The notes below the pieces were generated by a model. It searched no databases and was not told where the DNA came from. It saw only the letters and a list, made by a program, of their open reading frames with translations. A stretch of DNA of 64,000 nucleotides, taken from Dendrobates tinctorius (lineage: Eukaryota). The position numbers and the translations under genes are program-made. The stretch is taken from the NCBI RefSeq assembly GCF_039654945.1, contig NW_027361724.1, forward strand, positions 6,138,001-6,202,000, given 5' to 3'. How positions within the stretch are numbered: the stretch's first letter is position 1; every line of letters begins with the position of its first letter. This document shows positions 11,601-23,556 of this stretch, in pieces.

Positions 11601-14600
11601 TTCTATAATAGAAGAAGCAGAAATGAGGTTAAGATCTAGAAGCTGCTGGAGAAAAGCTCCAGATGCAGAAACGTCTCATACTACATCATGTCTCAGCTGA
11701 TTTGCACTGATCCGATGTAGGTGTAGGAGTGGTGGGGCTGATGGATTTTTCTCTGACACTCCAAGGGTTAAATGTATTTGTTGTTCATGTGTGTGATAAA
11801 TGGATGATACCCACTGGGACTACAGCTAGCTGAGACAGGGTTAACTGTAGTGGCCGATCCAGATTGGGAGGGGGAACTGAGAGCTAGTGGCAAGTCCATG
11901 AAGTGACAGTCAGTTAGTGTGTGAACCGCAGTGAACGAAGAAGCAGGTCTAGGACGAGAGGCTGCTAAGGATAGCGTGGGACTAATACTCTAGGCAGTGA
12001 ATTGCCGAAAATACCTTTCCATGTGATTCGTCTACGAGTGTGGGTGGGATTTTACATAGGAAGTTGCCAATCACTGGTGAGGGTGGGATTATACACAGGA
12101 AGCAGCCAATAAATGGTGTGGGTGGGATAATACAAAGAAAGCTGCCAATCACTGGTGAGAGTGGGGTTAGACACAGGACGCAGCCAATCACTGGTGTGGG
12201 CGGGGTTATACACACTGGTGTGGGTGGGATTATACAGGGCTCAGCGTTCAGAGCACTGCCAGATTTGTAGCAGAGAATATAGTGTAAGGTAATGGACACA
12301 TGGCTGGACTCAGGGTCTCTGCCTCTACATCATGCTGCTCTCAGATGTGGAGTAAATACCTGCTGACAGATTCCCTATAATATAACTGCTATTATCTCAC
12401 CCAGAATCGAGATGGCCACTGGTTACATGGGGATAATCCTGGACGGGTCATTCACCCCCATGATCAGTGACGCACAGACATCTCTCTCTATGATACTTAC
12501 AGTGGCAGGCTTGTGGATCTCCGGGATCTCACAGATCACACTCTCAGGATCCGGCAGCTCAGGAGTTTCTACAATAGAGATAAAATGTATCAGACATAAT
12601 CCAGCGACATCAGGGAGGAATGACGAGACGTCTGTAGGTGGGATTAATCCTGGTTATATGGGGGGCTCTGAGTATGGGGACGGGCCGCGCAGCCATAGAG
12701 AAATGTGCTGTCAGTGATGGAGGACCCCGATCACTACATGAGCTGCCCCCCACCCTTGCTGCACATGTGAGTGATGGGAAGAGAGCTGGAGCAGAGTTAG
12801 AATATGCAAATTAGCCTGGAAGTGCACTGGGGCGTGTCCCTGCACTCAGACTCTTATGCCATGCCCTGAGGGCACTTCTATCCTGCTTTGCATATGACTT
12901 CTACCTCCCATTTCTCCCGTCCGCTCCAGTCCTCCCACTGTTCCACATGTGACATGGCCGCCCGGTTCCCATCACACAGAGGGGAAAGAGTAAATGTGAC
13001 ATTCTCCCTGTCCTGTAGAATATCCGGATATTTACGGTAGATGGTCGTGTTATCGGCTCACCTGTGGTCAGATCGCTGTTCGGCCCCGACTGACTCGTAT
13101 TAGCGTCCGGGGATTCTGGGGGGACATTTTCCCCATCTTTGTCGTCGCCTTCTGGTGTCTCCTGATAGATAGAAGATATAGAATAAGATGTGGAACCTTT
13201 CACTGATCCCAGAATCCATAAATCAGAAGGACTGACCCTGCACCTACAGACGCCTGAGTGTCAACGGACAACCAGGCGCCATCATGGGAACAACGACTTT
13301 TTGTGATCACTACAATCAGTCTTTTATCAGCAGGTGATTATCAGTACAGGACTATCTGTCTTGTGCCCTGTAGTCCTGCTGCTCTGAGTAACTGCGCCCC
13401 CACCAATGACTGGCAGCTTTCTGCTATAAATAGTGTACATAGGAAGCTGCCAATCACTGGTGTGGGTGGGGTTCTATACTGGAAGCTGCCAATAACTGGT
13501 GTGGGTGGGGTTATACACACTGGTGTGGGCGGGATTATACAGGGCTCAGCATTCAGAACACTGCCAGATCTGCAGCAGAGAATATAGTGTAAGGTAATGG
13601 ACACATTGCTGGAATCAGGGTCTCTGCCTCTACATCATGCTGCTCTCAGATGTGGAGTAAATACCTGCTGACAGATTCCCTATAATATAACTGCTATTAC
13701 CTCCCTCAGAATAGAGACGGCCACTGGTTACATGGGGATAATCCTGGGCGGGTCATTCACCCCCAGGATCAGTGACGCATAGATATCTCCCTCTATTATA
13801 CTTACAGTGGAAGGCTCCTGGATCTCTGGTATCTCACAGATCACACTCTCAGGATCCGGCAGCTCAGGGGTTTCTACAATAGACATAAAATGTATCAGAC
13901 ACCATTAATCCCACAGACATAATCCAGTTACATCAGGGAGGAATGACGAGACGTCTGTAGGTGGGATTAATCCTGGTTATATGGGGGCTCTGAGTATGGG
14001 GTCAGGCAGCGCAGCCATAGAGAAATTTGCTGTCAGTGATGGAGGACCTCGATCACTAGATGAGCAGCCCCCCACCCTCACTGCACATGTGAGTGATGGG
14101 AAGAGAGCTGGAGCAGAGCCGGAATATGCATATTAGCCTGGAAGTGCACTGGGGCGTGTCCCTGCACTCGTACTCCTGCCACGACCCCCAGGACAGTTTC
14201 ATCCTGCTTTGCATATGACTTCTACCTCCCATTTTTCCCGATCGCTCCAGTCCTCCCACTGCTCCACATGTGAGCTGGCCGCCAGGTTCCCTTCACAGAG
14301 AGGGGAAAGAGTAAATGTGACGTTCTCCCTGTCCTGTATAATATACAGATATTTCCGGTAGATGGTCGTGTGATCGGCTCACCTGTGGTCAGATTGCTGC
14401 TCGGCCCCGGCTGACTCGTATTAGTCTCCGGGGATTCCAGGGGGACATTTTCCCCATCTTTGTTGTCGCCTTGTGGTGTCTCCTGATAGATAGAAGATAT
14501 AGAATAAGATATGGAACCTTCCACTGATCCCTGAATCCATAAATCAGAAGGACTGACCCTGCACCTACAGACGCCCGAGTGTCACCGGACAATCAGGTGC

Positions 14601-17600
14601 CATCATGGGAACAATGGCTGCTTGTGATCACTACAATCAGAGTTTTATCAGTAGGAGATTATCAGTACAGGGATATCTCTCTCTTGCCCTGTAGTCCTGT
14701 TTCTTTGAGTAACCCCACCGCCACCAATGATTGGCAGCTTTCTGCCTATAAACGGTGTACATAAGAAGCTGCAATCACTGGTGTGGGCGGGGTTATATAT
14801 AGGAAGCTGCCAATCACTGGTGTGGGGGGGTAACACACAGGAAGCACCCAATCACTGGTGTGGGCGGGATTATACACAGGACGCAGCCAATCACTGGTGT
14901 GGGCGGAATTATACACAGGAAGCACCCAATCACTGGTGTGGGTGGGGTTATACACACTGGTGTGGGTAGGGTTATACAGGACTCGGCGTTCAGAGCACTG
15001 CCAGATTTGCAGCAGAGAATATAGTGTAACGTAATGGACACATGGCTGGTCTCAGGGTCTCTGCCTCTACATCATGCTGCTCTCAGAGGTGGAGTAAGTA
15101 CCTTCTGACAGATTCCCTATAATATAACTGCTATTTTCTCGCCCAGAATAGAGACGTCCCCTGGTTACATGGGGATAATCCTGAACGGGTCATTCACCCC
15201 CATGATCAGTGACGCACAGACCTCTCTCTATGATACTTACAGTGGCAGGCTTGTGGATCTCCGGGATCTCACAGATCACACTTTCAGGATCCGGCAGCTC
15301 AGGGGTTTCTACAATAGAGATAAAATGTATCAGACACCATTAATCCCACAGACATAATCCAGCGACATCAGGGAGGAATGACGAGACGTCTGTATGTGGG
15401 ATTAATTCTGGTTATATGGGGGCTCTGAGTATGGGGACGGGACGCGCAGCCATAGAGAAATGTGCTGTCAGTGATGGAGGACCCCGATCACTACATGAGG
15501 AGCCCCCCCACCCTCGCTGCACATGGGTGATGAGTGATGGGGATCGAGGTGGAGCAGAGCCGGAATATGCATATTAGCCTGGAAGTGCAGTGGGGCATGT
15601 CCCTGCACTAGGACTCTTCTGCCACGCCCCCAGTGCACTTCCACACTGCTTTTCATATGACTTCTACCTCCCATTTCTCCTGACCAATACATTGGAGGAC
15701 CTAAACCGTCAGCTCCAGTCCTCGCACTGCTCCACATGTGACATGGCCGCCCGGTTCCCATCACACAGAGGGGAAAGAGTAAATGTGACGTTCTCCCTGT
15801 CCTGTAGAATATCCGGATATTTCCAGTAGACGGTCGTGTGATCGGCTCACCTGTGGTCAGATCGCTGCTCGGCTCCGGCTGACACGTATTTGGGTCCGGG
15901 GGGACATTTTCCCCATGTTTGTCGCCACCTTCTGGTGTCTCCTGATAGATAGAAGATATAGAATAAGATGTGGAACCTTTCACTGATCCTTGAATCCATA
16001 AATCAGAAGGACTGACCCTGCATCTACAGACACCCGAGTGTTACCGGACAATCAGGCACCATCATGGGAACAAAGTCTGCTTGTGATCACTGCTATCATT
16101 GTGTTATCAGCAGGAGATTATCAGTACAGGACTTTCTCTCTCGTGCCCTGTAGTCCTGCTTCTCTGAGTAACCCCGCCCCCTCCAATGATTGGCAGGTTT
16201 CTGCATATAAACAGTGTACATAGGAAGCTGCCAGTCTCTGCTGTGGTCGGGGTTATATGTAGGATACTGCCAATCACTGGTGTGGGCGGGGTTATTCACA
16301 GAAAGCTGCCAATCATTGGCGTGGGCAGGGTTATACACAAGAAGCAGCTAATCAGTGGTGTGGGCGGGATTATACAGGGCTCAGCGTTCAGAGCACTGCC
16401 AGATCTGCAGCAGACAATATAGTGTAAGGTAATGGACACATGGCTGGACTCAGGGTCTCTGCCTCTACATCGTGCTGCTCTCAGAGGTGGAGTAAATACC
16501 TTCTGACAGATTCCCTATAATATAACTGCTATTATCTCGCCCAGAATAGAGATGTCCCCTGGTTACATGGGCATAATCCTGAACGGGTCATTCACCCCCA
16601 GGATCAGTGACGCACAGACATGTCCCTCTATGATACTTACAGTGGCAGGCTCGTGGATCTCCGGGATCTCACAGATCACACTCTCAGGATCCGGCAGCTC
16701 AGGGGTTTCTACAATAGAGATAAAATGTATCAGACACCATTAATCCCACAGACATAATCCAGCGACATCAGGGAGGAATGACGAGACGTCTGTAGGTGGA
16801 ATTAATTCTGGTTATATGGGGGCTCTGAGTATGGGGACGGGACGCGCAGCCATAGAGAAATGTGCTGTCAGTGATGGAGGACCCCGATCACTACATGAGG
16901 AGCCCCCCACCCTCGCTGCACATGTGAGTGATGGGAATTGAGGTGGAGTAGAGCCGGAATATGCATATTAGCCTGGAAGTGCAGTGGGGCATGTCCCTGC
17001 ACTCGGACTCTTCTGCCACGCCCCCAGTGCACTTCCACACTGCTTTTCATGACTTCTACCTCCCATTTCTCCTGACCGGTACATTGGAGGCCCTAAACCA
17101 TCCGCTCCAGTCCTCCCACCGCTCCATAAGTGACATGGCCGCCCGGTTCCCATCACACAGAGGGGAAAGAGTAAATGTGATGTTCTCCCTGTCCTGTAGA
17201 ATATCTGGATATTTCCGGTAGACGGTCGTGTGATTGGCTCACCTGTGGTCAGATCGCTGCTCGGCCCCGGCTGACTCGTATTTGGGTCCGGGGATTCCGG
17301 GGGGACATTTTCCCCATCTTTGTCGCCGCCTTCTGGTGTCTCCTGATAGATAGAAGATATAGAATAAGATGTGGAACCTTTCACTGATCCTTGAATCCAT
17401 AAATCAGAAGGACTGACCCTGCATCTACAGATGCCCGAGTGTCACCAGACAATCAGGCACCATCATGGGAACAAAATCTGCTTGTGATCACTGCTATCAT
17501 TGTGTTATCAGCAGGAGATTATCAGTACAGGACTTTCTCTCTCGTGCCCTGTAGTCCTGCTTCTCTGAGTAACCCCGCCCCCTCCAATGATTGGCATGTT

Positions 17601-20600
17601 TCTGCATATAAACAGTGTACATAGGAAGCTGCCAGTCTCTGTTGTGGTCGGGGTTATATGTAGGATACTGCCAAATACTGTTGTGGGCGGGGTTATTCAC
17701 AGAAAGCTGCCAATCATTGGCGTGGGCACGGTTAAACACAAGAAGCAGCTAATCATTGGTGTGGGCGGGATTATACAGGTCTCAGCGTTCAGAGCACTGA
17801 CAGATCTGCAGCAGACAATATAGTGTAAGGTAATGGACACATGGCTGGAATCAGGGTCTCTGCCTCTACATCGTGCTGCTCTCAGAGGTGGAGTAAATAC
17901 CTTCTGACAGATTCCCTATAATATAACTGCTATTATCTCGCCCAGAATAGAGATGTCCCCTGGTTACATGGGGATAATCCTGAACGGGTCATTCACCCCC
18001 AGGATCAGTGAGGCACAGACATCTCTCTCTATGATACTTACAGTGGCAGGCTCGTGGATCTCCGGGATCTCACAGATCACACTCTCAGGATCCGGCAGCT
18101 CAGTGGTTTCTACAATAGAGATAAAATGTATCAGACACCATTAATCCCACAGACATAATCCAGCGACATCAGGGAGGAATGACGAGACGTCTGTAGGTGG
18201 GATTAATCCTGGTTATATGGGGGCTCTGAGTATGGGGACGGGCCGCGCAGCCATAGAGAAATGTGCTGTCTGTGATGGAGGACCCCGATTACTACATGAG
18301 GAGCCCCCCACCCTCGCTGCACATGTGAGTGATGGGAAGAGAGCTGGAGCAGAGCCGGAAAATGCAAATTAGCCTGGAAGTGCACTGGGGCGTGACCTTG
18401 CACTCGGACTCCTCTGTCCCACGCCCCTAGGGCACTTCCATCTTACTTTACATATGACTTCTACCTCCCATTTCTCCTGAGCGGCACATTGGAGGCCATA
18501 AACCGTCCGCTCCAGTCCTCCCACTGCTCCACATGTGACAAGGCCACCCAGTTCCCATCACACAGAAGGGAAAGAGTAAATGTGACATTCTCCCTGTCCT
18601 GTAGAATATCCGGATATTTCTTATAGACGGTCGTGTGATCGGCTCACCTGTGGTCAGATCGCTGCTCGGCCCCGGCTGACTCGTATTAGTGTCCGGGGAT
18701 TCCGGGGGGACATTTTCCCCATCTTTGTCGCTGCCTTCTGATGTCTCCTGATAGATAGAAGATATAGAATAAGATGTGGAACCTTCCACTGATCCCTGAA
18801 TCCATAAATCAGAAAGACTGACCCTGCACCTACAGACGCCCGAGTGTCACCGGACAATCAGGCGCCATCATGGGAACAACGTCTGCTTGTGATCACTACA
18901 ATCAGTGTTTTATTAGCCTGAGATTATCAGTACAGGACTTTCTCTCTCGTGCCCTGTAGTCCTGCTGCTCTGAGTAACCCCGTCCCCACCAATGATTGGC
19001 AGCTTTCTGCCTATAAACAGAGTACATAGGAAGCTGCCAATCACTGTTTTGGGTGGGGTTATATATAGGATACTGCCAATCACTGGTGTGGGCGGGGTTA
19101 TACACAAGACGCAGCCAATCACTGGTGTGGGCGGGATTATACAGGGCTCAGTGTTCAGAGCACTGCCAGATCTGCAGCAAAGAATATAGTGTAAGGTAAT
19201 GGACACATCGCTGGAATCAGGGTCTCTGCCTCTACATTGTGCTGCTCTCTGATGTGGAGTAAATACCTTCTGACAGATTCCCTATAATATAACTGCTATT
19301 ATCTTGCCCAGAATAGAGACAGCCCTTGGTTACATGGGGATAATCCTGGATGGGTCATTAACCCCCAGGATCAGTGACGCACAGACATCTCCCTCTATGA
19401 TACTTACAGTGGCAGGCTCGTGGATCTCCGGGATCTCACAGATCACACTCTCAGGGTCCGGCAGCTCCGGGGTTTCTACAACAGAGATAAAATGTATCAG
19501 ACGCCATTAATCCCACAGACATAATCCGGCGACATCAGGGAGGAATGACGAGACGTCTGTAGGTGGGATTTATCTTGGTTATATGGGGAGCTCTGAGTAT
19601 GGGGACGGGCCGCGCAGCCATAGAGAAATGTGCACTGGGGCATGTCTCTGCACTCGGACTCCTCTGTCCCATTTCTCCTGTCCGGCACATTGGAGGCCAT
19701 AAACTGTCCATTCCAGTCCTCCCACTGCTCCACATGTGACATTTCCGCCCAGTTCCCATCACACAGAGGGGAAAGTGTTATGAATGAGTCATCGGAGGAG
19801 GAAAAAACAAAAATACAAGCTAAGTCCAGAAAACCGGAGAGGTTGGTAGCTAGCGGATTGCAAACACCTGATCCTATTCACAACAACTAACAGTAGCCGT
19901 GGAGCGTTCCTACGGTGGTCCTAGACAACTCGTTCACAGCCAGAGAACTAAATAAACCTAAAGAAAGAAAGGGGAAATCTAAACTGCCCCAGAGCAGACC
20001 CCAAAGCAATAGACAGCCCCCAACATGTATTGACGGTGAAAACAGATGAAAACACAAACACAGACAGAAAGACAGGCTGAGCAAATGATGGGGTCCTCAC
20101 TAACTAGATAGGACAGGAAAGAAAAGCAACTGTCTGCAATCACGCAAAAACCCTGCCAAAAATACTGTCCAACACGTCTGATAGAAAAGGCCCTGAAGTC
20201 ACTAGACTTCAAAATCACTGTATCAGCACTCAGGTATATTCTGAAAACGGAGCAAAGAGATCAACTGATCAGAGACAAAAATGGAGTTCAGCCAGTCCCA
20301 ACCAGGGCTGGCTGAACACAAACACTAAGTAAACCAGACAAAATCTCATGGAACAATAGCAGAGCAAAAACTTAGCTTTAGTAGACAGGACTAAACTGGA
20401 GGCCAGAGCTCAGAGCAGAGAGGATCACCAGCAACCCAGCAGGGCGTCGGCGGCCTTATATCCACTCAGAGATTCCGGATGTCCAATCACACTCCATCTG
20501 TTCAGATGACAGGTTTTTCCCATCCAAATCAATTTCACTACCTCCTTTCACCAGCAGAGGGAGCTCATCGGACATCAAAAGTGAAGGAGAAAATGAGCTC

Positions 20601-23556
20601 ATAACAGGAAAGAGTAAATGTGACGTTCTCCTTATCTTGTAGAATATCCGGATATTTCCGGTAGATGGTCGTGTGATCGGCTCACCTGTGGTCAGATCGC
20701 TGCTCAGCCCCGGCTGACTCGTATTAGTGTCCAGGGATTCCGGGGGGACATTTTCCCCGTCTTTGTCATCGCCTTGTGGTGTCTCCTGATAGATAGAAGA
20801 TATAGAATAAGATGTGGAACCTTCCACTGATTCCTGAATCCATAAATCAGAAGGACTGACCCTGCACCTACAGACGCCCGAGTGTCACTGGACAACCAGG
20901 CGTCTTCATGGGAACGTTCTCATCCCCAGTGGAGTAAGAGACGGGTTCAGTATTGATCCTTACCGGGCGTTCCGGGGAGCGGTCCGGACCTTCCAGCACA
21001 TACAGGACTTTTTCGGCCGGTTCTTTAACAAAAGCCAAATCTCCATCTTGAGATCTTTCTTCAGCCTATAAGGAAGGAAGGAAACAAAAGGGAAATCGTG
21101 AGATGAGAGTGGTGAGATTGGAGGCGGCCATAGTGTAATGACTGCTGAGCGGTGCGAATGGAGGCTGCCATAGTGTAATGACTGCGGAGCGGTGCGAATG
21201 GAGGCTGCCATAGTGTAATGACTGCGGAGCGGTGAGAATGGAGGCGGCCATAGTGTAATGACTGCGGAGCGGTGAGAATGGAGGCGGCCATAGTGTAATG
21301 ACTGCGGAGCGGTGAGAATGGAGGCGGCCATAGTGTAATGACTGCGGAGCGGTGAGAATGGAGGCGGCCATAGTGTAATGACTGCTGAGCGGTGAGAATG
21401 GAGGCGGCCATAGTGTAATGACTGCGGAGCGGTGAGAATGGAGGCGGCCATAGTGTAATGACTGCTGAGCGGTGAGAATGGAGGCGGCCATAGTGTAATG
21501 ACTGCTGAGCGGTGAGAATGGAGGCGGCCATAGTGTAATGACTGCTGAGCGGTGAGAATGGAGGCGGACATAGTGTAATGACTGCGGAGCGGTGAGAATG
21601 GAGGCGGCCATAGAGTAATGACTGCGGAGCGGTGAGAATGGAGGCGGCCATAGTGTAATGACTGCGGAGCGGTGAGAATGGAGGCGGCCATAGTGTAATG
21701 ACTGCTGAGCGGTGAGAATGGAGGCGGCCATAGTGTAATGACTGCGGAGCGGTGAGAATGGAGGCGGCCATAGTGTAATGACTGCGGAGCGGTGAGAATG
21801 GAGGCGGCCATAGTGTAATGACTGCGGAGCGGTGAGAATGGAGGCGGCCATAGTGTAATGACTGCTGAGCGGTGAGAATGGAGGCGGCCATAGTGTAATG
21901 ACTGCGGAGCGGTGAGAATGGAGGCGGCCATAGTGTAATGACTGCTGAGCGGTGAGAATGGAGGCGGCCATAGTGTAATGACTGCTGAGCGGTGAGAATG
22001 GAGGCGGCCATAGTGTAATGACTGCTGAGCGGTGAGAATGGAGGCGGCCATAGTGTAATGACTGCGGAGCGGTGAGAATGGAGGCGGCTATAGAGTAATG
22101 ACTGCGGAGCGGTGAGAATGGAGGCGGCCATAGTGTAATGACTGCGGAGCGGTGAGAATGGAGGCGGCCATAGTGTAATGACTGCTGAGCGGTGAGAATG
22201 GAGGCGGCCATAGTGTAATGACTGCGGAGCGGTGAGAATGGAGGCTGCCATAGTGTAATGACTGCAGAGCGGTGAGAATGGAGGCTGCCATAGTGTAATG
22301 ACTGCGGAGCGGTGAGAATGGAGGCGGCCATAGTGTAATGACTGCGGAGCGGTGAGAATGGAGGCGGCCATAGTGTAATGACTGCGGAGCGGTGAGAATG
22401 GAGGCGTCCATAGTGTAATGACTGCGGAGCGGTGAGAATGGAGGCTGCCATAGTGTAATGACTGCGGAGCGGTGAGAATGGAGGCGGCCATAGTGTAATG
22501 ACTGTGGAGCGGTGAGAATGGAGGCTGCCATAGTGTAATGACTGCGGAGCGGTGAGAATAGAGGTGGCCATAGTATAATGACCGCAGAGCGGAGAGAATG
22601 GAGGCGGCCATAGTGTAATGACCATGGAGCGGTGAGAATGGAGGGGGCCATAGTGTAATGACCATGGAGCGGTGAGAATTGTGGCGGCCATTGTGTAATG
22701 ACCATGGAGCGGTGAGAATGGAGGCGGCCATAGTATAATGACCGCAGAGCGGTGAGAATGGAGGCGTCCATAGTGTAATGACCATGGAGCGGTGAGAATG
22801 AAGGCGGCCATAGTATAATGACCGCAGAGCGGTGAGAATGGAGGCGGCCATAGTGTAATGACCATGGAGCGGTGAGAATGGAGGCGGCCATAGTGTAATG
22901 ACCATGGAGCGGTGAGAATGGAGGTGGCCATAGTATAATGACCGCAGAGCGGTGAGAATGGAGGAGGCCATAGTGTAATGACTGCGGAGCGGTGAGAATG
23001 GAGGAGACCATAGTGTAATGACTGCGGAGTGGTGAGAATGGAGGCGGCCGTAGTGTAATCACTGCGGAGCGGTGAGAATGGAGGCAGCCATAGTGTAATG
23101 ACTGCGGAGTGGTGAGAATGGAGGCGGCCATAGTGTAATGACTGCGGAGTGGTGAGAATGGAGGCGGCCATAGTGTAATGACTGCGGAGCGGTGAGAATG
23201 GAGGCGGCCATAGTGTAATGATCGTGGGTCTGGGCCTCGTCCTGTGTAATATTAGGGGACACCAGAAGCTTCTGTCCACCATTATGACCCATCATTGTGG
23301 AGAAGGTATGTGCAGAGCGTCCACCACTTACCTGCTGTAGTAATGTCCTGATGTTTCGGGTTAAATCCGTCAGATACTTTGAGGTAAGACGGTCTTGTTG
23401 GTATTTGGTCAGGCAGTCCTGCACTAGCTCCACCACCAGCCGGTGAGTGAAGCCGAGGATGCCATCGGGTGGTAGAAGCTTAATGTCAGAGCAATGGGTG
23501 TAAAGAATCTCCGATAATGCTTCTACCTGAAGCTTGTCTAGAAGAAATTCAGCCAT
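8639..23556 (-). CDS. Divergent MAST (microtubule-associated Ser/Thr kinase)-like protein, ~881 aa, probable pseudokinase, spliced (24 coding exons)
   Basis: Exons 5'->3' on the - strand: 23556-23332, 21065-20964, cassettes [20785-20686+19475-19408], [18747-18648+18109-18042], [17342-17243+16708-16641], [15941-15851+15308-15241], [14482-14383+13873-13806], [13161-13062+12568-12501], then 11602-11517, 11328-11120, 10743-10605, 10516-10384, 10192-10027, 9910-9812, 9578-9456, 9316-9207, 9113-8957, 8736-8639. All are GT-AG and phase-compatible, 2646 nt in total. The N-terminus ([32 protein letters not shown]) resembles the MAST pre-kinase DUF1908 region. Kinase motifs: [102 protein letters not shown]. 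Minus-strand AATAAA at 8331-8336. Confidence 0.85.
9207..11602 (-). CDS. Kinase domain and AGC C-terminal exons of the MAST-like gene (8 exons)
   Basis: Exons of 86, 209, 139, 133, 166, 99, 123 and 110 nt translate continuously into AGC kinase subdomains I-XI and a tail ending [13 protein letters not shown] (MAST-type hydrophobic motif region). Confidence 0.9.
12040..20910 (-). repeat. Six tandem ~1.3-1.4-kb intragenic duplications, each carrying a 100-nt + 68-nt exon pair
   Basis: Spacings between 68-nt exons are 1305, 1435, 1400, 1401 and 1366 bp. Each unit also has a variable-copy 39-bp repeat (GCTGCCAATCACTGGTGTGGGCGGGATTATACACAGGAA). Confidence 0.92.
19776..20606 (-). mobile_element. 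Solo LTR (831 bp)
   Basis: TGTTATGA...TCATAACA termini and a GGAAAG target-site duplication (19770-19775 / 20607-20612). The site is empty in the sibling repeat units. Minus-strand TATAAGG near 20454-20460. Confidence 0.8.
21105..23220. repeat. 40-bp minisatellite (GAGGCGGCCATAGTGTAATGACTGCGGAGCGGTGAGAATG)n, ~53 copies, intron 1 of the MAST-like gene
   Basis: Exact 40-bp period; it accounts for the 347-738 aa repetitive ORFs. Confidence 0.96.

What the first reader, a model, noticed from the sequence alone, without database searches (positions are those of the whole stretch)
12501..20785. Six-copy, frame-preserving two-exon cassette: an expandable and possibly combinatorially spliced linker
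Seen: each ~1.4-kb unit holds exon A (100 nt, phase 0->1, [33 protein letters not shown]) and exon B (68 nt, phase 1->0, [23 protein letters not shown]). All 12 exons keep AG/GT sites. The only exonic length change is an in-frame 9-nt deletion (15851-15941), while the introns carry many indels, which hints at selection on frame. Any A can join any downstream B, and any B any downstream A, without a frameshift. Inference: isoforms or alleles with up to 6 repeats of a 56-aa acidic PEST-like unit bearing TP/SP sites would tune the spacing, phosphorylation or turnover of the kinase-like domain.
Basis: partly seen in the sequence, partly recalled or inferred. Interest (0 to 1): 0.78.

Follow-up and report, generated by a model that had tools for sequence, protein, structure and literature searches.

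The report
Six-fold duplicated exon pair, frog kinase
A poison-frog kinase gene has copied the same two small coding exons six times in a row, which gives the protein a long, floppy, acidic spacer; this is a real but familiar kind of gene change, and there is no evidence yet that the copies are mixed and matched by splicing.

Summary
On the minus strand, 20785-12501, six tandem units each carry exon A (100 nt, 91 in unit 4, phase 0>1) and exon B (68 nt, phase 1>0). All 24 splice sites are intact and there are no stop codons.

The window is Dendrobates tinctorius. The gene is a PDZ-less MAST-like kinase whose RefSeq model XP_073433713.1 uses only B5-A6-B6. A and B correspond in position to two single-copy exons that join DUF1908 to the kinase domain in canonical MAST. 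Most frog paralogues have one pair.

Copy number varies:
- Three D. tinctorius paralogues have 6 units.
- A Ranitomeya variabilis relative has 3 units with the same duplication junction.
- Two other paralogue subfamilies have arrays of 6 and 2 units. The 6-unit one has different breakpoints; the 2-unit one has different spacing.

RNA-like contigs show A>B, B>A and B>next-exon junctions, so units are spliced in series.

The array encodes 333 aa with net charge about -77, and AlphaFold2 predicts no structure. Exon A evolves neutrally (pN/pS about 1) and exon B is constrained (about 0.23).

"Expandable linker" is supported over evolutionary time. Combinatorial splicing and phosphorylation or turnover tuning are untested. 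The scan had already noted a similar exon array in this family on other DNA.

Verdict: new member of a known kind, moderate interest.

The parts
23332..23556 (-). Exon E1, 75 codons from the ATG ([10 protein letters not shown]...LLQQ), donor gtaagt. It encodes a DUF1908-like helical N-terminal part.
   Evidence: Reading; tblastn of P0032; Pfam DUF1908 E=6.5e-10. It is not in the RefSeq model of this gene.
21107..23221 (.). 40-bp minisatellite of about 53 copies that fills most of intron 1.
   Evidence: TRF. The paralogue L004 has 37 copies at the same place.
20964..21065 (-). Exon E2, 102 nt, phase 0>0 ([34 protein letters not shown]).
   Evidence: It matches exon 2 of P0135 and P0032.
20686..20785 (-). 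Exon A1 (100 nt, phase 0>1).
19408..19475 (-). Exon B1 (68 nt, phase 1>0).
18648..18747 (-). Exon A2.
18042..18109 (-). Exon B2.
17243..17342 (-). Exon A3.
16641..16708 (-). Exon B3.
   Evidence: An X2 contig matches it exactly and stops two bases past its 5' edge, as an A>B junction would. An X5 contig joins a B exon that maps here to exon X.
15851..15941 (-). Exon A4 (91 nt, with the 9-nt in-frame deletion).
   Evidence: The same deletion is in unit 4 of the paralogue L001.
15241..15308 (-). Exon B4.
14383..14482 (-). Exon A5.
   Evidence: X1 and X2 contigs end at its edges.
13806..13873 (-). Exon B5. It is the first cassette exon used by RefSeq XP_073433713.1, which starts at an ATG in the intron just upstream (13886).
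13062..13161 (-). Exon A6.
   Evidence: The X5 loose end at 13161 equals the 3' end of a B exon.
12501..12568 (-). Exon B6.
11517..11602 (-). Exon X (86 nt, phase 0>2; [29 protein letters not shown]). It carries the Gly-rich loop and follows the last B exon.
   Evidence: The spliced joint 11327|11516 is seen in X1 and X5 but not in the DNA-like run X6.
8642..11328 (-). Remaining kinase and tail exons, roughly 11118-11328, 10607-10741, 10384-10515, 10028-10192, 9810-9911, 9457-9576, 9207-9314, 8955-9113 and 8642-8734. The catalytic motif reads HRN, not HRD.
   Evidence: Exact peptide chain of P0130 on the window; Pkinase hits.
12053..20915 (-). Full extent of unit-to-unit homology. It starts about 130 nt upstream of A1 and ends about 450 nt downstream of B6.
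   Evidence: blastn of unit 3 against the region and the alignment.
13400..13651 (.). Piece of a high-copy dispersed repeat with a 39-bp minisatellite, present in every B>A intron (also at 12038-12236, 14758-14978, 16221-16376, 17639-17777 and 19023-19143). It lies next to the duplication junction.
   Evidence: TRF. Contig depth reaches about 29,000 and many contigs diverge at 13651.

Best explanation
The region is a real six-fold tandem amplification of a two-exon coding cassette. It sits inside a Dendrobates tinctorius gene of the frog-specific, PDZ-less MAST-like kinase family.

Shown:
- A and B are the frog versions of two single-copy exons. In canonical MAST kinases these encode the end of DUF1908 and the link to the kinase domain.
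- The 1.4-kb unit spans from about 130 nt upstream of A to about 430-570 nt downstream of B.
- The duplication junction is shared with Ranitomeya variabilis, so the first duplication is older than the split of the two genera.
- Copy number has since drifted to 3 in R. variabilis and 6 in three D. tinctorius paralogues. The edge units are stable and the inner units have turned over.
- One other paralogue subfamily built its own six-unit array with different breakpoints. A third subfamily has a two-unit array with different spacing.
- A>B, B>A and B>X junctions are seen in RNA-like contigs.

Inferred:
- The unit was copied by unequal exchange next to a dispersed repeat and minisatellite.
- The units are spliced one after another.
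- The resulting protein is about 880 aa. It has a 333-aa, strongly acidic, Pro/Glu/Thr/Ser-rich disordered spacer carrying six copies of the conserved B motif ([13 protein letters not shown]). The spacer lies between the helical N-terminal part and the kinase-like domain.
- The array acts as a length-variable, multivalent linker. Selection acts on intactness and on the B motif, not on the sequence of A.
For: Anatomy, phases and the open 999-nt reading.

Identity of the gene:
- XP_073433713.1 is encoded exactly by the window's exons.
- The locus is JAYMGB010000066.1:6146639-6151886.
- DUF1908 and Pkinase hits.

Homology to canonical MAST linker exons.

Copy number in relatives:
- One unit in most members.
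- Three units in R. variabilis, in both genome and model.
- Six units in L001 and L004.
- A separate six-unit array in L003.
- A two-unit array in L006.

Unit trees show 1:1 pairing with the neighbouring paralogue and turnover of the inner units. The junction shared with R. variabilis is.

RNA-like contigs:
- The GT..AG joint 11327|11516 is seen in X1 and X5 but is absent from the DNA-like run X6.
- X5 joins a B exon directly to exon X.
- The loose ends at 13161 and 16710 equal the ends of B and A exons.

Constraint: pN/pS is 0.23 for B and 1.02 for A. A 38-nt core of B is identical in all 15 copies compared. Intactness tests gave P = 0.17 and 0.087.

Disorder: composition. AlphaFold2 of the three-unit relative gives pLDDT of about 30 and no secondary structure over residues 103-288.
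Against: - No full-length transcript of this gene was seen. The contigs are short and cannot be told apart from near-identical paralogues (about 1% divergence).
- The RefSeq model of this gene uses only 1.5 units. Models of paralogues use 1 to 5 A exons in inconsistent ways.
- Exon A shows no protein-level constraint, and exon divergence equals intron divergence. The upstream units could therefore be drifting.
- Intronic contigs in the same runs show that unspliced RNA or DNA is also present.
- The kinase has HRN in place of HRD, so the protein may be catalytically dead and the gene's function is uncertain.
- The AlphaFold2 model rests on only 36 sequences.
Confidence: 0.8

Rival explanations
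1. Combinatorial splicing: one gene regularly makes isoforms with different subsets of one to six units. This would tune linker length, phosphorylation or turnover.
For: - Phases allow every A>B, B>A, E2>A and B>X jump.
- RefSeq models of near-identical paralogues differ in the units they include. One model (P0135) joins A1 to B2.
- An X5 contig joins exon X to a B exon that maps best to unit 3.
Against: - The RefSeq models are automatic. They start at ATGs inside introns and rest on reads that map to many near-identical exons.
- The X5 join is explained by mapping a paralogue's last B exon to the most similar copy.
- All splice sites are equally strong and identical from unit to unit, which favours serial inclusion.
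- No two contigs show competing junctions from the same exon.
Confidence: 0.25
2. Mostly relic array: only the last one to three units are used, as in the RefSeq models. Transcription starts inside the array, and the upstream units with E1 and E2 are decaying leftovers.
For: - XP_073433713.1 starts just upstream of B5, and XP_073433712.1 starts before A4.
- Exon A has pN/pS of about 1, and exons diverge as fast as introns.
Against: - All 24 splice sites, all frames, and E1 and E2 are intact here and in two further six-unit paralogues. The chance of this is about 0.015 for this array alone if the two tests are independent.
- An exact B3 contig and A5-type contigs end at exon edges. One X1 contig fits an E2>A junction.
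- The R. variabilis model runs E1-E2-three units-X.
- The model start codons (MSIV, MVPDCP) lie in intron sequence and look like fill-ins by the annotation software.
Confidence: 0.15
3. Assembly artefact, or a transposable-element repeat with chance open frames.
For: - The units are 90-95% alike.
- A dispersed high-copy repeat lies in every B>A intron.
Against: - The unit-specific variants recur unit for unit in a paralogue 40 kb away.
- Six units are also found in a third locus, and three in another species.
- The exons align with canonical MAST coding sequence and occur in spliced contigs.
- No Pfam or Rfam feature was found on either strand of the introns.
Confidence: 0.02

Closest known systems
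Canonical MAST1-4 kinases (DUF1908 - linker - AGC kinase - PDZ)
   Same: The N-terminal helical part matches DUF1908 profile positions 140-237. The kinase domain is of the AGC type. Exons A, B and X align in order with the canonical stretch [12 protein letters not shown]...DPLEE / IAQL.NYDSGTAETPETDES / ..RKP.ESDFETIKLISNGAYG.
   Different: - There is no PDZ domain.
- The first half of DUF1908 is missing.
- The catalytic motif reads HRN instead of HRD in this D. tinctorius cluster.
- The linker exon pair is repeated six times instead of once.
- The gene belongs to a very large frog-specific expansion.
Tandem exon duplication in general, for example the short repeated PEVK exons of titin (from my own knowledge of the field)
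   Same: Short neighbouring exons with compatible phases arise by intragenic unequal exchange. They encode a Pro/Glu-rich disordered segment whose length depends on how many modules are included.
   Different: The module here is a pair of exons that is symmetric only as a pair (0>1, 1>0), so single exons cannot be skipped. Differential inclusion is documented for titin but not shown here.
CaMKII variable linker, with alternatively spliced linker exons between the kinase and hub domains (bioRxiv 10.1101/721589, listed; details from my own knowledge)
   Same: A disordered linker next to a kinase domain, built from several small exons that could in principle be combined.
   Different: The CaMKII exons are not recent copies of each other, and their splicing and its effect on activation have been measured. 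Here the modules are young duplicates and the splicing pattern is unknown.
Clusters of mutually exclusive duplicated exons (Dscam type; from my own knowledge)
   Same: Origin by tandem duplication of exons.
   Different: In this array, copies are joined in series. B>A junctions occur in contigs, and annotated proteins carry 2-5 units. Copies are added, not swapped.
Array of ten 78-81-nt exons in the acidic tail of another MAST-like kinase of this genome (earlier scan note s1-389100)
   Same: Same gene family and genome, with tandemly duplicated small coding exons giving an acidic disordered repeat.
   Different: It lies in a different part of the protein (the C-terminal tail), uses single symmetric exons, and is at a different locus. 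I did not test it here.

Membership tests
MAST-family AGC kinase gene | N-terminal DUF1908 domain | tested here: met
   The E1 open frame hits PF08926 at E=6.5e-10, profile positions 140-215. The match is partial: only the second half of the domain is present.
MAST-family AGC kinase gene | AGC-type protein kinase domain following the linker | tested here: met
   Pkinase hits on the exon frames. The best solved relatives are ROCK, PKC and PKA. The full product P0130 carries Pkinase.
MAST-family AGC kinase gene | C-terminal PDZ domain | tested here: not met
   No PDZ is on record for P0130 or found in P0032, P0135 or P0005. Canonical P0118 has one.
MAST-family AGC kinase gene | Catalytic HRD aspartate | tested here: not met
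   The window encodes VHRNLKPQ, and so do all listed members of the D. tinctorius cluster that include this stretch. R. variabilis P0032 keeps HRD.
Tandemly duplicated coding exons (intragenic amplification) | Adjacent homologous exons with kept splice sites and compatible phases | tested here: met
   Six A and six B exons, all with AG/GT sites, phases 0>1 and 1>0, and an open 999-nt reading.
Tandemly duplicated coding exons (intragenic amplification) | Descent from a single-copy exon (pair) of the parent gene | tested here: met
   Most family members and canonical MAST have one copy at the same position.
Tandemly duplicated coding exons (intragenic amplification) | Copies are included in mature RNA | tested here: inconclusive
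   A>B, B>A and B>X junctions, and contigs ending at the edges of exons of unit 3 and unit 5 type, are seen. The contigs are short and cannot be assigned to this gene as against paralogues. Not all six units were seen.
Combinatorially spliced modular linker (titin PEVK or CaMKII-linker type) | Modules can be joined in any order-preserving subset without a frameshift | tested here: met
   Phase arithmetic. E2 ends in phase 0 and exon X starts in phase 0.
Combinatorially spliced modular linker (titin PEVK or CaMKII-linker type) | One gene yields transcripts with different subsets of modules | not testable with these tools
   Only short contigs were available and the single read-laying run was used. 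The RefSeq models differ, but they are automatic and come from different paralogues.
Mutually exclusive exon cluster | Only one copy of the duplicated exon is included per transcript | tested here: not met
   A B>A junction is present in contigs. Annotated proteins contain 2-5 units in series.
PEST-like degradation or phosphorylation region | Enrichment in Pro, Glu/Asp, Ser and Thr with few basic residues | tested here: met
   P 18%, E 17%, T 12%, S 9%, D 9%; 8 K+R against 86 D+E; 14 [ST]P sites. This is composition only.
PEST-like degradation or phosphorylation region | Shown effect on turnover or phosphorylation | not testable with these tools
   Needs experiments.

The most novel reading that the evidence does not exclude
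The same exon pair has been amplified independently in at least two paralogue subfamilies of a fast-expanding, partly catalytically altered kinase family. The type 1 array reached six or three units and the type 2 array reached six units with different breakpoints; a third subfamily has a two-unit array of different spacing. In this reading, selection repeatedly favours more copies of the conserved B motif in an acidic spacer. The number of units, set by unequal exchange and perhaps by splicing, would be an evolvable dial for binding strength or reach of the kinase-like domain.
Probability: 0.2. Interest if true: 0.6.

Novelty: new member of a known kind. Interest (0 to 1): 0.36.

Why it matters
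- It corrects the annotation of this gene. The RefSeq model misses E1, E2 and 4.5 of the six units, about 360 codons.
- It documents a clean, datable case of intragenic exon-pair amplification with known breakpoints. The junction is shared across genera, the inner units have turned over, and the same event recurred independently in sister paralogues.
- It draws attention to a very large expansion of PDZ-less MAST-like kinases in poison frogs and other hyloid frogs. I found no paper on this expansion in the library searched.
- If unit number proves to vary between transcripts or individuals, the locus would be a handy natural series for asking how linker length and motif number affect a kinase scaffold.
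- As it stands, the mechanism (tandem exon duplication giving a repetitive disordered segment) is well known.

Tried and rejected
- Searches with an open frame around exon A, and with three units of P0137, found only two short RefSeq proteins and no proteins from transcript contigs. Transcript-level unit order could therefore not be read from the protein collections.
- The profile search with the six A exons gave only four representatives. That was enough to identify the family, but not to count arrays genome-wide.
- The run search found no run recorded as RNA. The four runs laid are contigs, so depth, transcript starts and long-range exon order are not available.
- I tried to assign the 338-nt X1 contig to A1. 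A1, A2 and A3 are all 8 mismatches from A5, so only the extra matching base at 14483 points to an E2>A junction. I treat this as tentative.
- The exon-versus-intron divergence contrast came out flat. The 15.8% A-B intron value is inflated by the unit-1 insertion and was not used.
- The locus of Anomaloglossus P0034 could not be fetched.
- Rfam, and Pfam on plus-strand and intron frames, gave nothing.
- Paper searches found nothing on MAST-like kinases in poison frogs.
- A transposable-element origin of the exons and an assembly artefact were considered and rejected (see rival explanations).
Full report
**Observation.** The feature is on the minus strand.
- Translating all frames finds six copies each of the two peptides.
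- Reading the borders shows that every exon A (100 nt; 91 nt in unit 4) is preceded by a pyrimidine tract and ..tatcag, and is followed by gtgagc. Every exon B (68 nt) is preceded by ttgtag and followed by gtaagt.
- A runs from phase 0 to phase 1, and B from phase 1 to phase 0.
- The twelve exons joined in order give 999 nt with no stop.
- Units start 2038, 1405, 1401, 1459 and 1321 nt apart. Unit 1 is longer because its A-B intron holds an extra insertion.
- Homology between units begins about 130 nt upstream of A1 (20915) and ends about 450 nt downstream of B6 (near 12053).

**The gene.**
- Downstream of the array on the same strand lie exons of an AGC kinase.
- Upstream lie a first exon with an ATG that matches the second half of DUF1908 and a 102-nt second exon.
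- A search with an open frame around exon A found a Phyllobates terribilis 'MAST3-like' protein with one A-B pair in front of its kinase domain.
- A profile of the six A exons, run against 1.84 billion representatives, found only four proteins, all from dendrobatid frogs.
- A search with one of these listed its best 120 relatives. Most are PDZ-less 'MAST-like' proteins from Ranitomeya, Phyllobates, Dendrobates, Anomaloglossus, Engystomops and Rhinoderma, a large frog-specific expansion. A few canonical PDZ-bearing MAST proteins of birds and a lizard came at the bottom of the list.
- One D. tinctorius cluster of 14 near-identical proteins lies on one 23-Mb scaffold.
- Its member XP_073433713.1 is encoded residue for residue by this window, at JAYMGB010000066.1:6146639-6151886. 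The window is therefore Dendrobates tinctorius.
- That RefSeq model starts at an ATG inside the intron before B5 and uses only B5, A6 and B6. E1, E2 and the other nine cassette exons are unannotated although intact.
- With them the reading frame is open from E1 to the last exon, about 880 codons.

**Are A and B real exons?**
- An alignment running from the second exon to the Gly-rich loop puts the frog linker in register with canonical MAST proteins of birds and a lizard.
  - A corresponds to [35 protein letters not shown].
  - B corresponds to IAQL.NYDSGTAETPETDESVSS.
  - Exon X corresponds to the stretch ending in DFETIKLISNGAYG.
  - Rhinoderma and Engystomops proteins are intermediate.
- Most frog paralogues have exactly one A-B pair.
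- Contigs of four public runs were laid on 11001-17000.
  - Runs X1 and X5 contain a clean GT..AG joint, 11327|11516. The DNA-like run X6 lacks it and instead has a contig running through that exon border.
  - An X5 contig joins exon X directly to a B exon.
  - Loose ends at 13161 and 16710 equal the 3' ends of a B and an A exon, which means B>A and A>B junctions.
  - X1 and X2 contigs stop at the edges of exons of B3 and A5 type.
  - One 338-nt X1 contig fits an E2>A junction, but this is tentative.
- The same runs also hold intronic contigs. The contigs cannot be assigned to this gene as against its paralogues, which differ by about 1%.
- So the exons are coding and are spliced in series in this gene cluster. 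Inclusion of all six units in this gene is not shown.

**Copy number and history.**
- The neighbouring paralogue 40 kb away (L001) and a third one 0.75 Mb away (L004) also have E2, six A-B pairs and X.
- In unit trees, each window unit pairs with the same-numbered unit of L001 at about 1% divergence. The array is therefore older than that gene duplication.
- L004 shares units 1, 5 and 6 one to one, but its inner units group with each other, as do window units 3 and 4. The inner units have therefore turned over.
- The closest R. variabilis relative has three units in the genome, all used in its RefSeq protein. Its B>A introns carry the same junction segment as the window's, which is absent upstream of the first A and downstream of the last B in both species. 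The first duplication is therefore older than the split of the two genera.
- A different D. tinctorius subfamily (L003) has its own six-unit array with A of 103 nt and units of about 990 nt. Its breakpoints are 251 nt after B and 30 nt before A, so it is an independent event.
- A third subfamily in R. variabilis has two units with different spacing; I did not map its breakpoints.
- Every array keeps its frames. All splice sites are intact in the three six-unit arrays where I read them (the window, L004 and L003).

**Selection.**
- Among the six window units, divergence is 8.2% in A, 5.2% in B, 7.6-8.0% in the A-B intron and 5.7-6.8% in the flanks.
- pN/pS is 1.02 for A and 0.23 for B. The counts are small and the pairs are not independent.
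- A 38-nt core of B ([13 protein letters not shown]) is identical in all 15 copies compared, across two species.
- At the intron indel rate, 1.8 frame-breaking indels are expected in the exons and none is seen (P = 0.17). Over four arrays the expected total is 4.25, although two of those arrays share ancestry.
- If the observed substitutions are placed at random, all splice sites stay intact with no stop in 8.7% of trials.
- Intactness is therefore probably maintained. The sequence of A is not constrained, while B is.

**What the array encodes.**
- The 333 residues have pI 4.05 and net charge about -77. They are 18% Pro, 17% Glu, 12% Thr, 9% Ser and 9% Asp, with 14 [ST]P sites.
- AlphaFold2 on the three-unit R. 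variabilis relative, with a 36-sequence alignment, gives a helical N-terminal part and a recognisable kinase fold. Residues 103-288, which are the end of E2 and all the units, have pLDDT of about 30 and no secondary structure.
- The best reading is a disordered acidic spacer that repeats the B motif.
- The catalytic motif is HRN in this D. tinctorius cluster and HRD in R. variabilis. The domain behind the linker may therefore be inactive.

**Mechanism.**
- Shown: the unit borders, the shared junction, the differences in copy number and the serial junctions.
- Inferred: unequal exchange between misaligned copies, probably helped by the dispersed repeat with a 39-bp minisatellite that sits beside the junction in every B>A intron.
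- Inferred: default inclusion of all units, because their splice sites are identical and strong.
- Inferred: a role as a length-variable, multivalent linker.
- Combinatorial splicing is possible by phase but has no direct support. The varied RefSeq models of paralogues are automatic, begin at ATGs in intron sequence about 100 nt upstream of an A exon, and rest on reads that map to many copies.

**Comparison and novelty.**
- This is tandem exon duplication, a well-known route to repetitive disordered segments (titin PEVK is the classic case).
- The idea of a spliced variable linker beside a kinase has a known parallel in CaMKII.
- It is not a mutually exclusive exon cluster.
- RefSeq proteins of relatives already show two to five units.
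- I found no paper on the family or on these arrays in the library searched.
- I rate it a new member of a known kind. It has some added interest from the recurrent independent amplification and from the annotation gap.

**Limits.**

Noticed in passing
window 21107-23221: A 40-bp minisatellite of about 53 copies (95% matches) fills intron 1 of the gene and is open in all three minus-strand frames. The paralogue L004 has 37 copies at the same place, so its length differs between gene copies.
   Followed up: partly
window 10607-10741 (minus): The catalytic loop reads HRNLKPQ instead of HRDLKP. The same change is in all listed D. tinctorius cluster members that include this stretch, while the R. 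variabilis relative P0032 keeps HRD. The VAIK lysine, DFG and APE motifs are present.
   Followed up: partly
window 12501-23556 (minus) against RefSeq XP_073433713.1: The RefSeq model of this gene starts at an ATG in the intron upstream of B5 (13886). It omits E1, E2, A1-A5 and B1-B4, all of which are intact. Models of the paralogues start at similar intronic ATGs (MAPDCP, MVPDCP) about 100 nt upstream of an A exon.
   Followed up: yes
window 12038-12236, 13400-13651, 14758-14978, 16221-16376, 17639-17777, 19023-19143: Each B>A intron holds a piece of a very high-copy dispersed repeat with a 39-bp minisatellite. Contig depth reaches about 29,000 and hundreds of contigs diverge at 13651. In R. 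variabilis the minisatellite has grown to about 2.5 kb in one intron.
   Followed up: partly
window 19778-20607 (intron A1-B1): Unit 1 has an extra insertion of about 700-800 nt in its A-B intron. It is shared with the paralogue L001 but absent from L004. The first unit of the independent array in L003 also has an enlarged A-B intron (1650 nt).
   Followed up: no
L004, and proteins P0052, P0131, P0132, P0135: RefSeq models of paralogues use a 22-codon piece of the A-B intron ([22 protein letters not shown]) in place of a B exon. The same DNA is present in the window's introns but read in another frame. It may be a cryptic exon or an annotation artefact.
   Followed up: no
proteins P0003, P0006, P0007 (R. 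variabilis): Three separate 173-174-aa RefSeq proteins consist of E1, E2 and one A exon joined directly to the last (Cys-rich) exon, which is phase-compatible. They are kinase-less short members of the family.
   Followed up: no
window 43382-43735 (+): An open frame reads like the PH domain of an oxysterol-binding protein (..[21 protein letters not shown]..). It is probably an exon of a neighbouring gene on the plus strand.
   Followed up: no
window 38240-39328 (+): A 363-codon open frame resembles a Tc1/mariner-type transposase, just after the N run at 38007-38144. Earlier notes place an Ngaro retrotransposon at 31144-39929.
   Followed up: no
window 2400-3600, 25860-26680, 29800-31100, 39700-41000: Several long low-complexity or short-period repeat blocks are open in many frames.
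   Followed up: no
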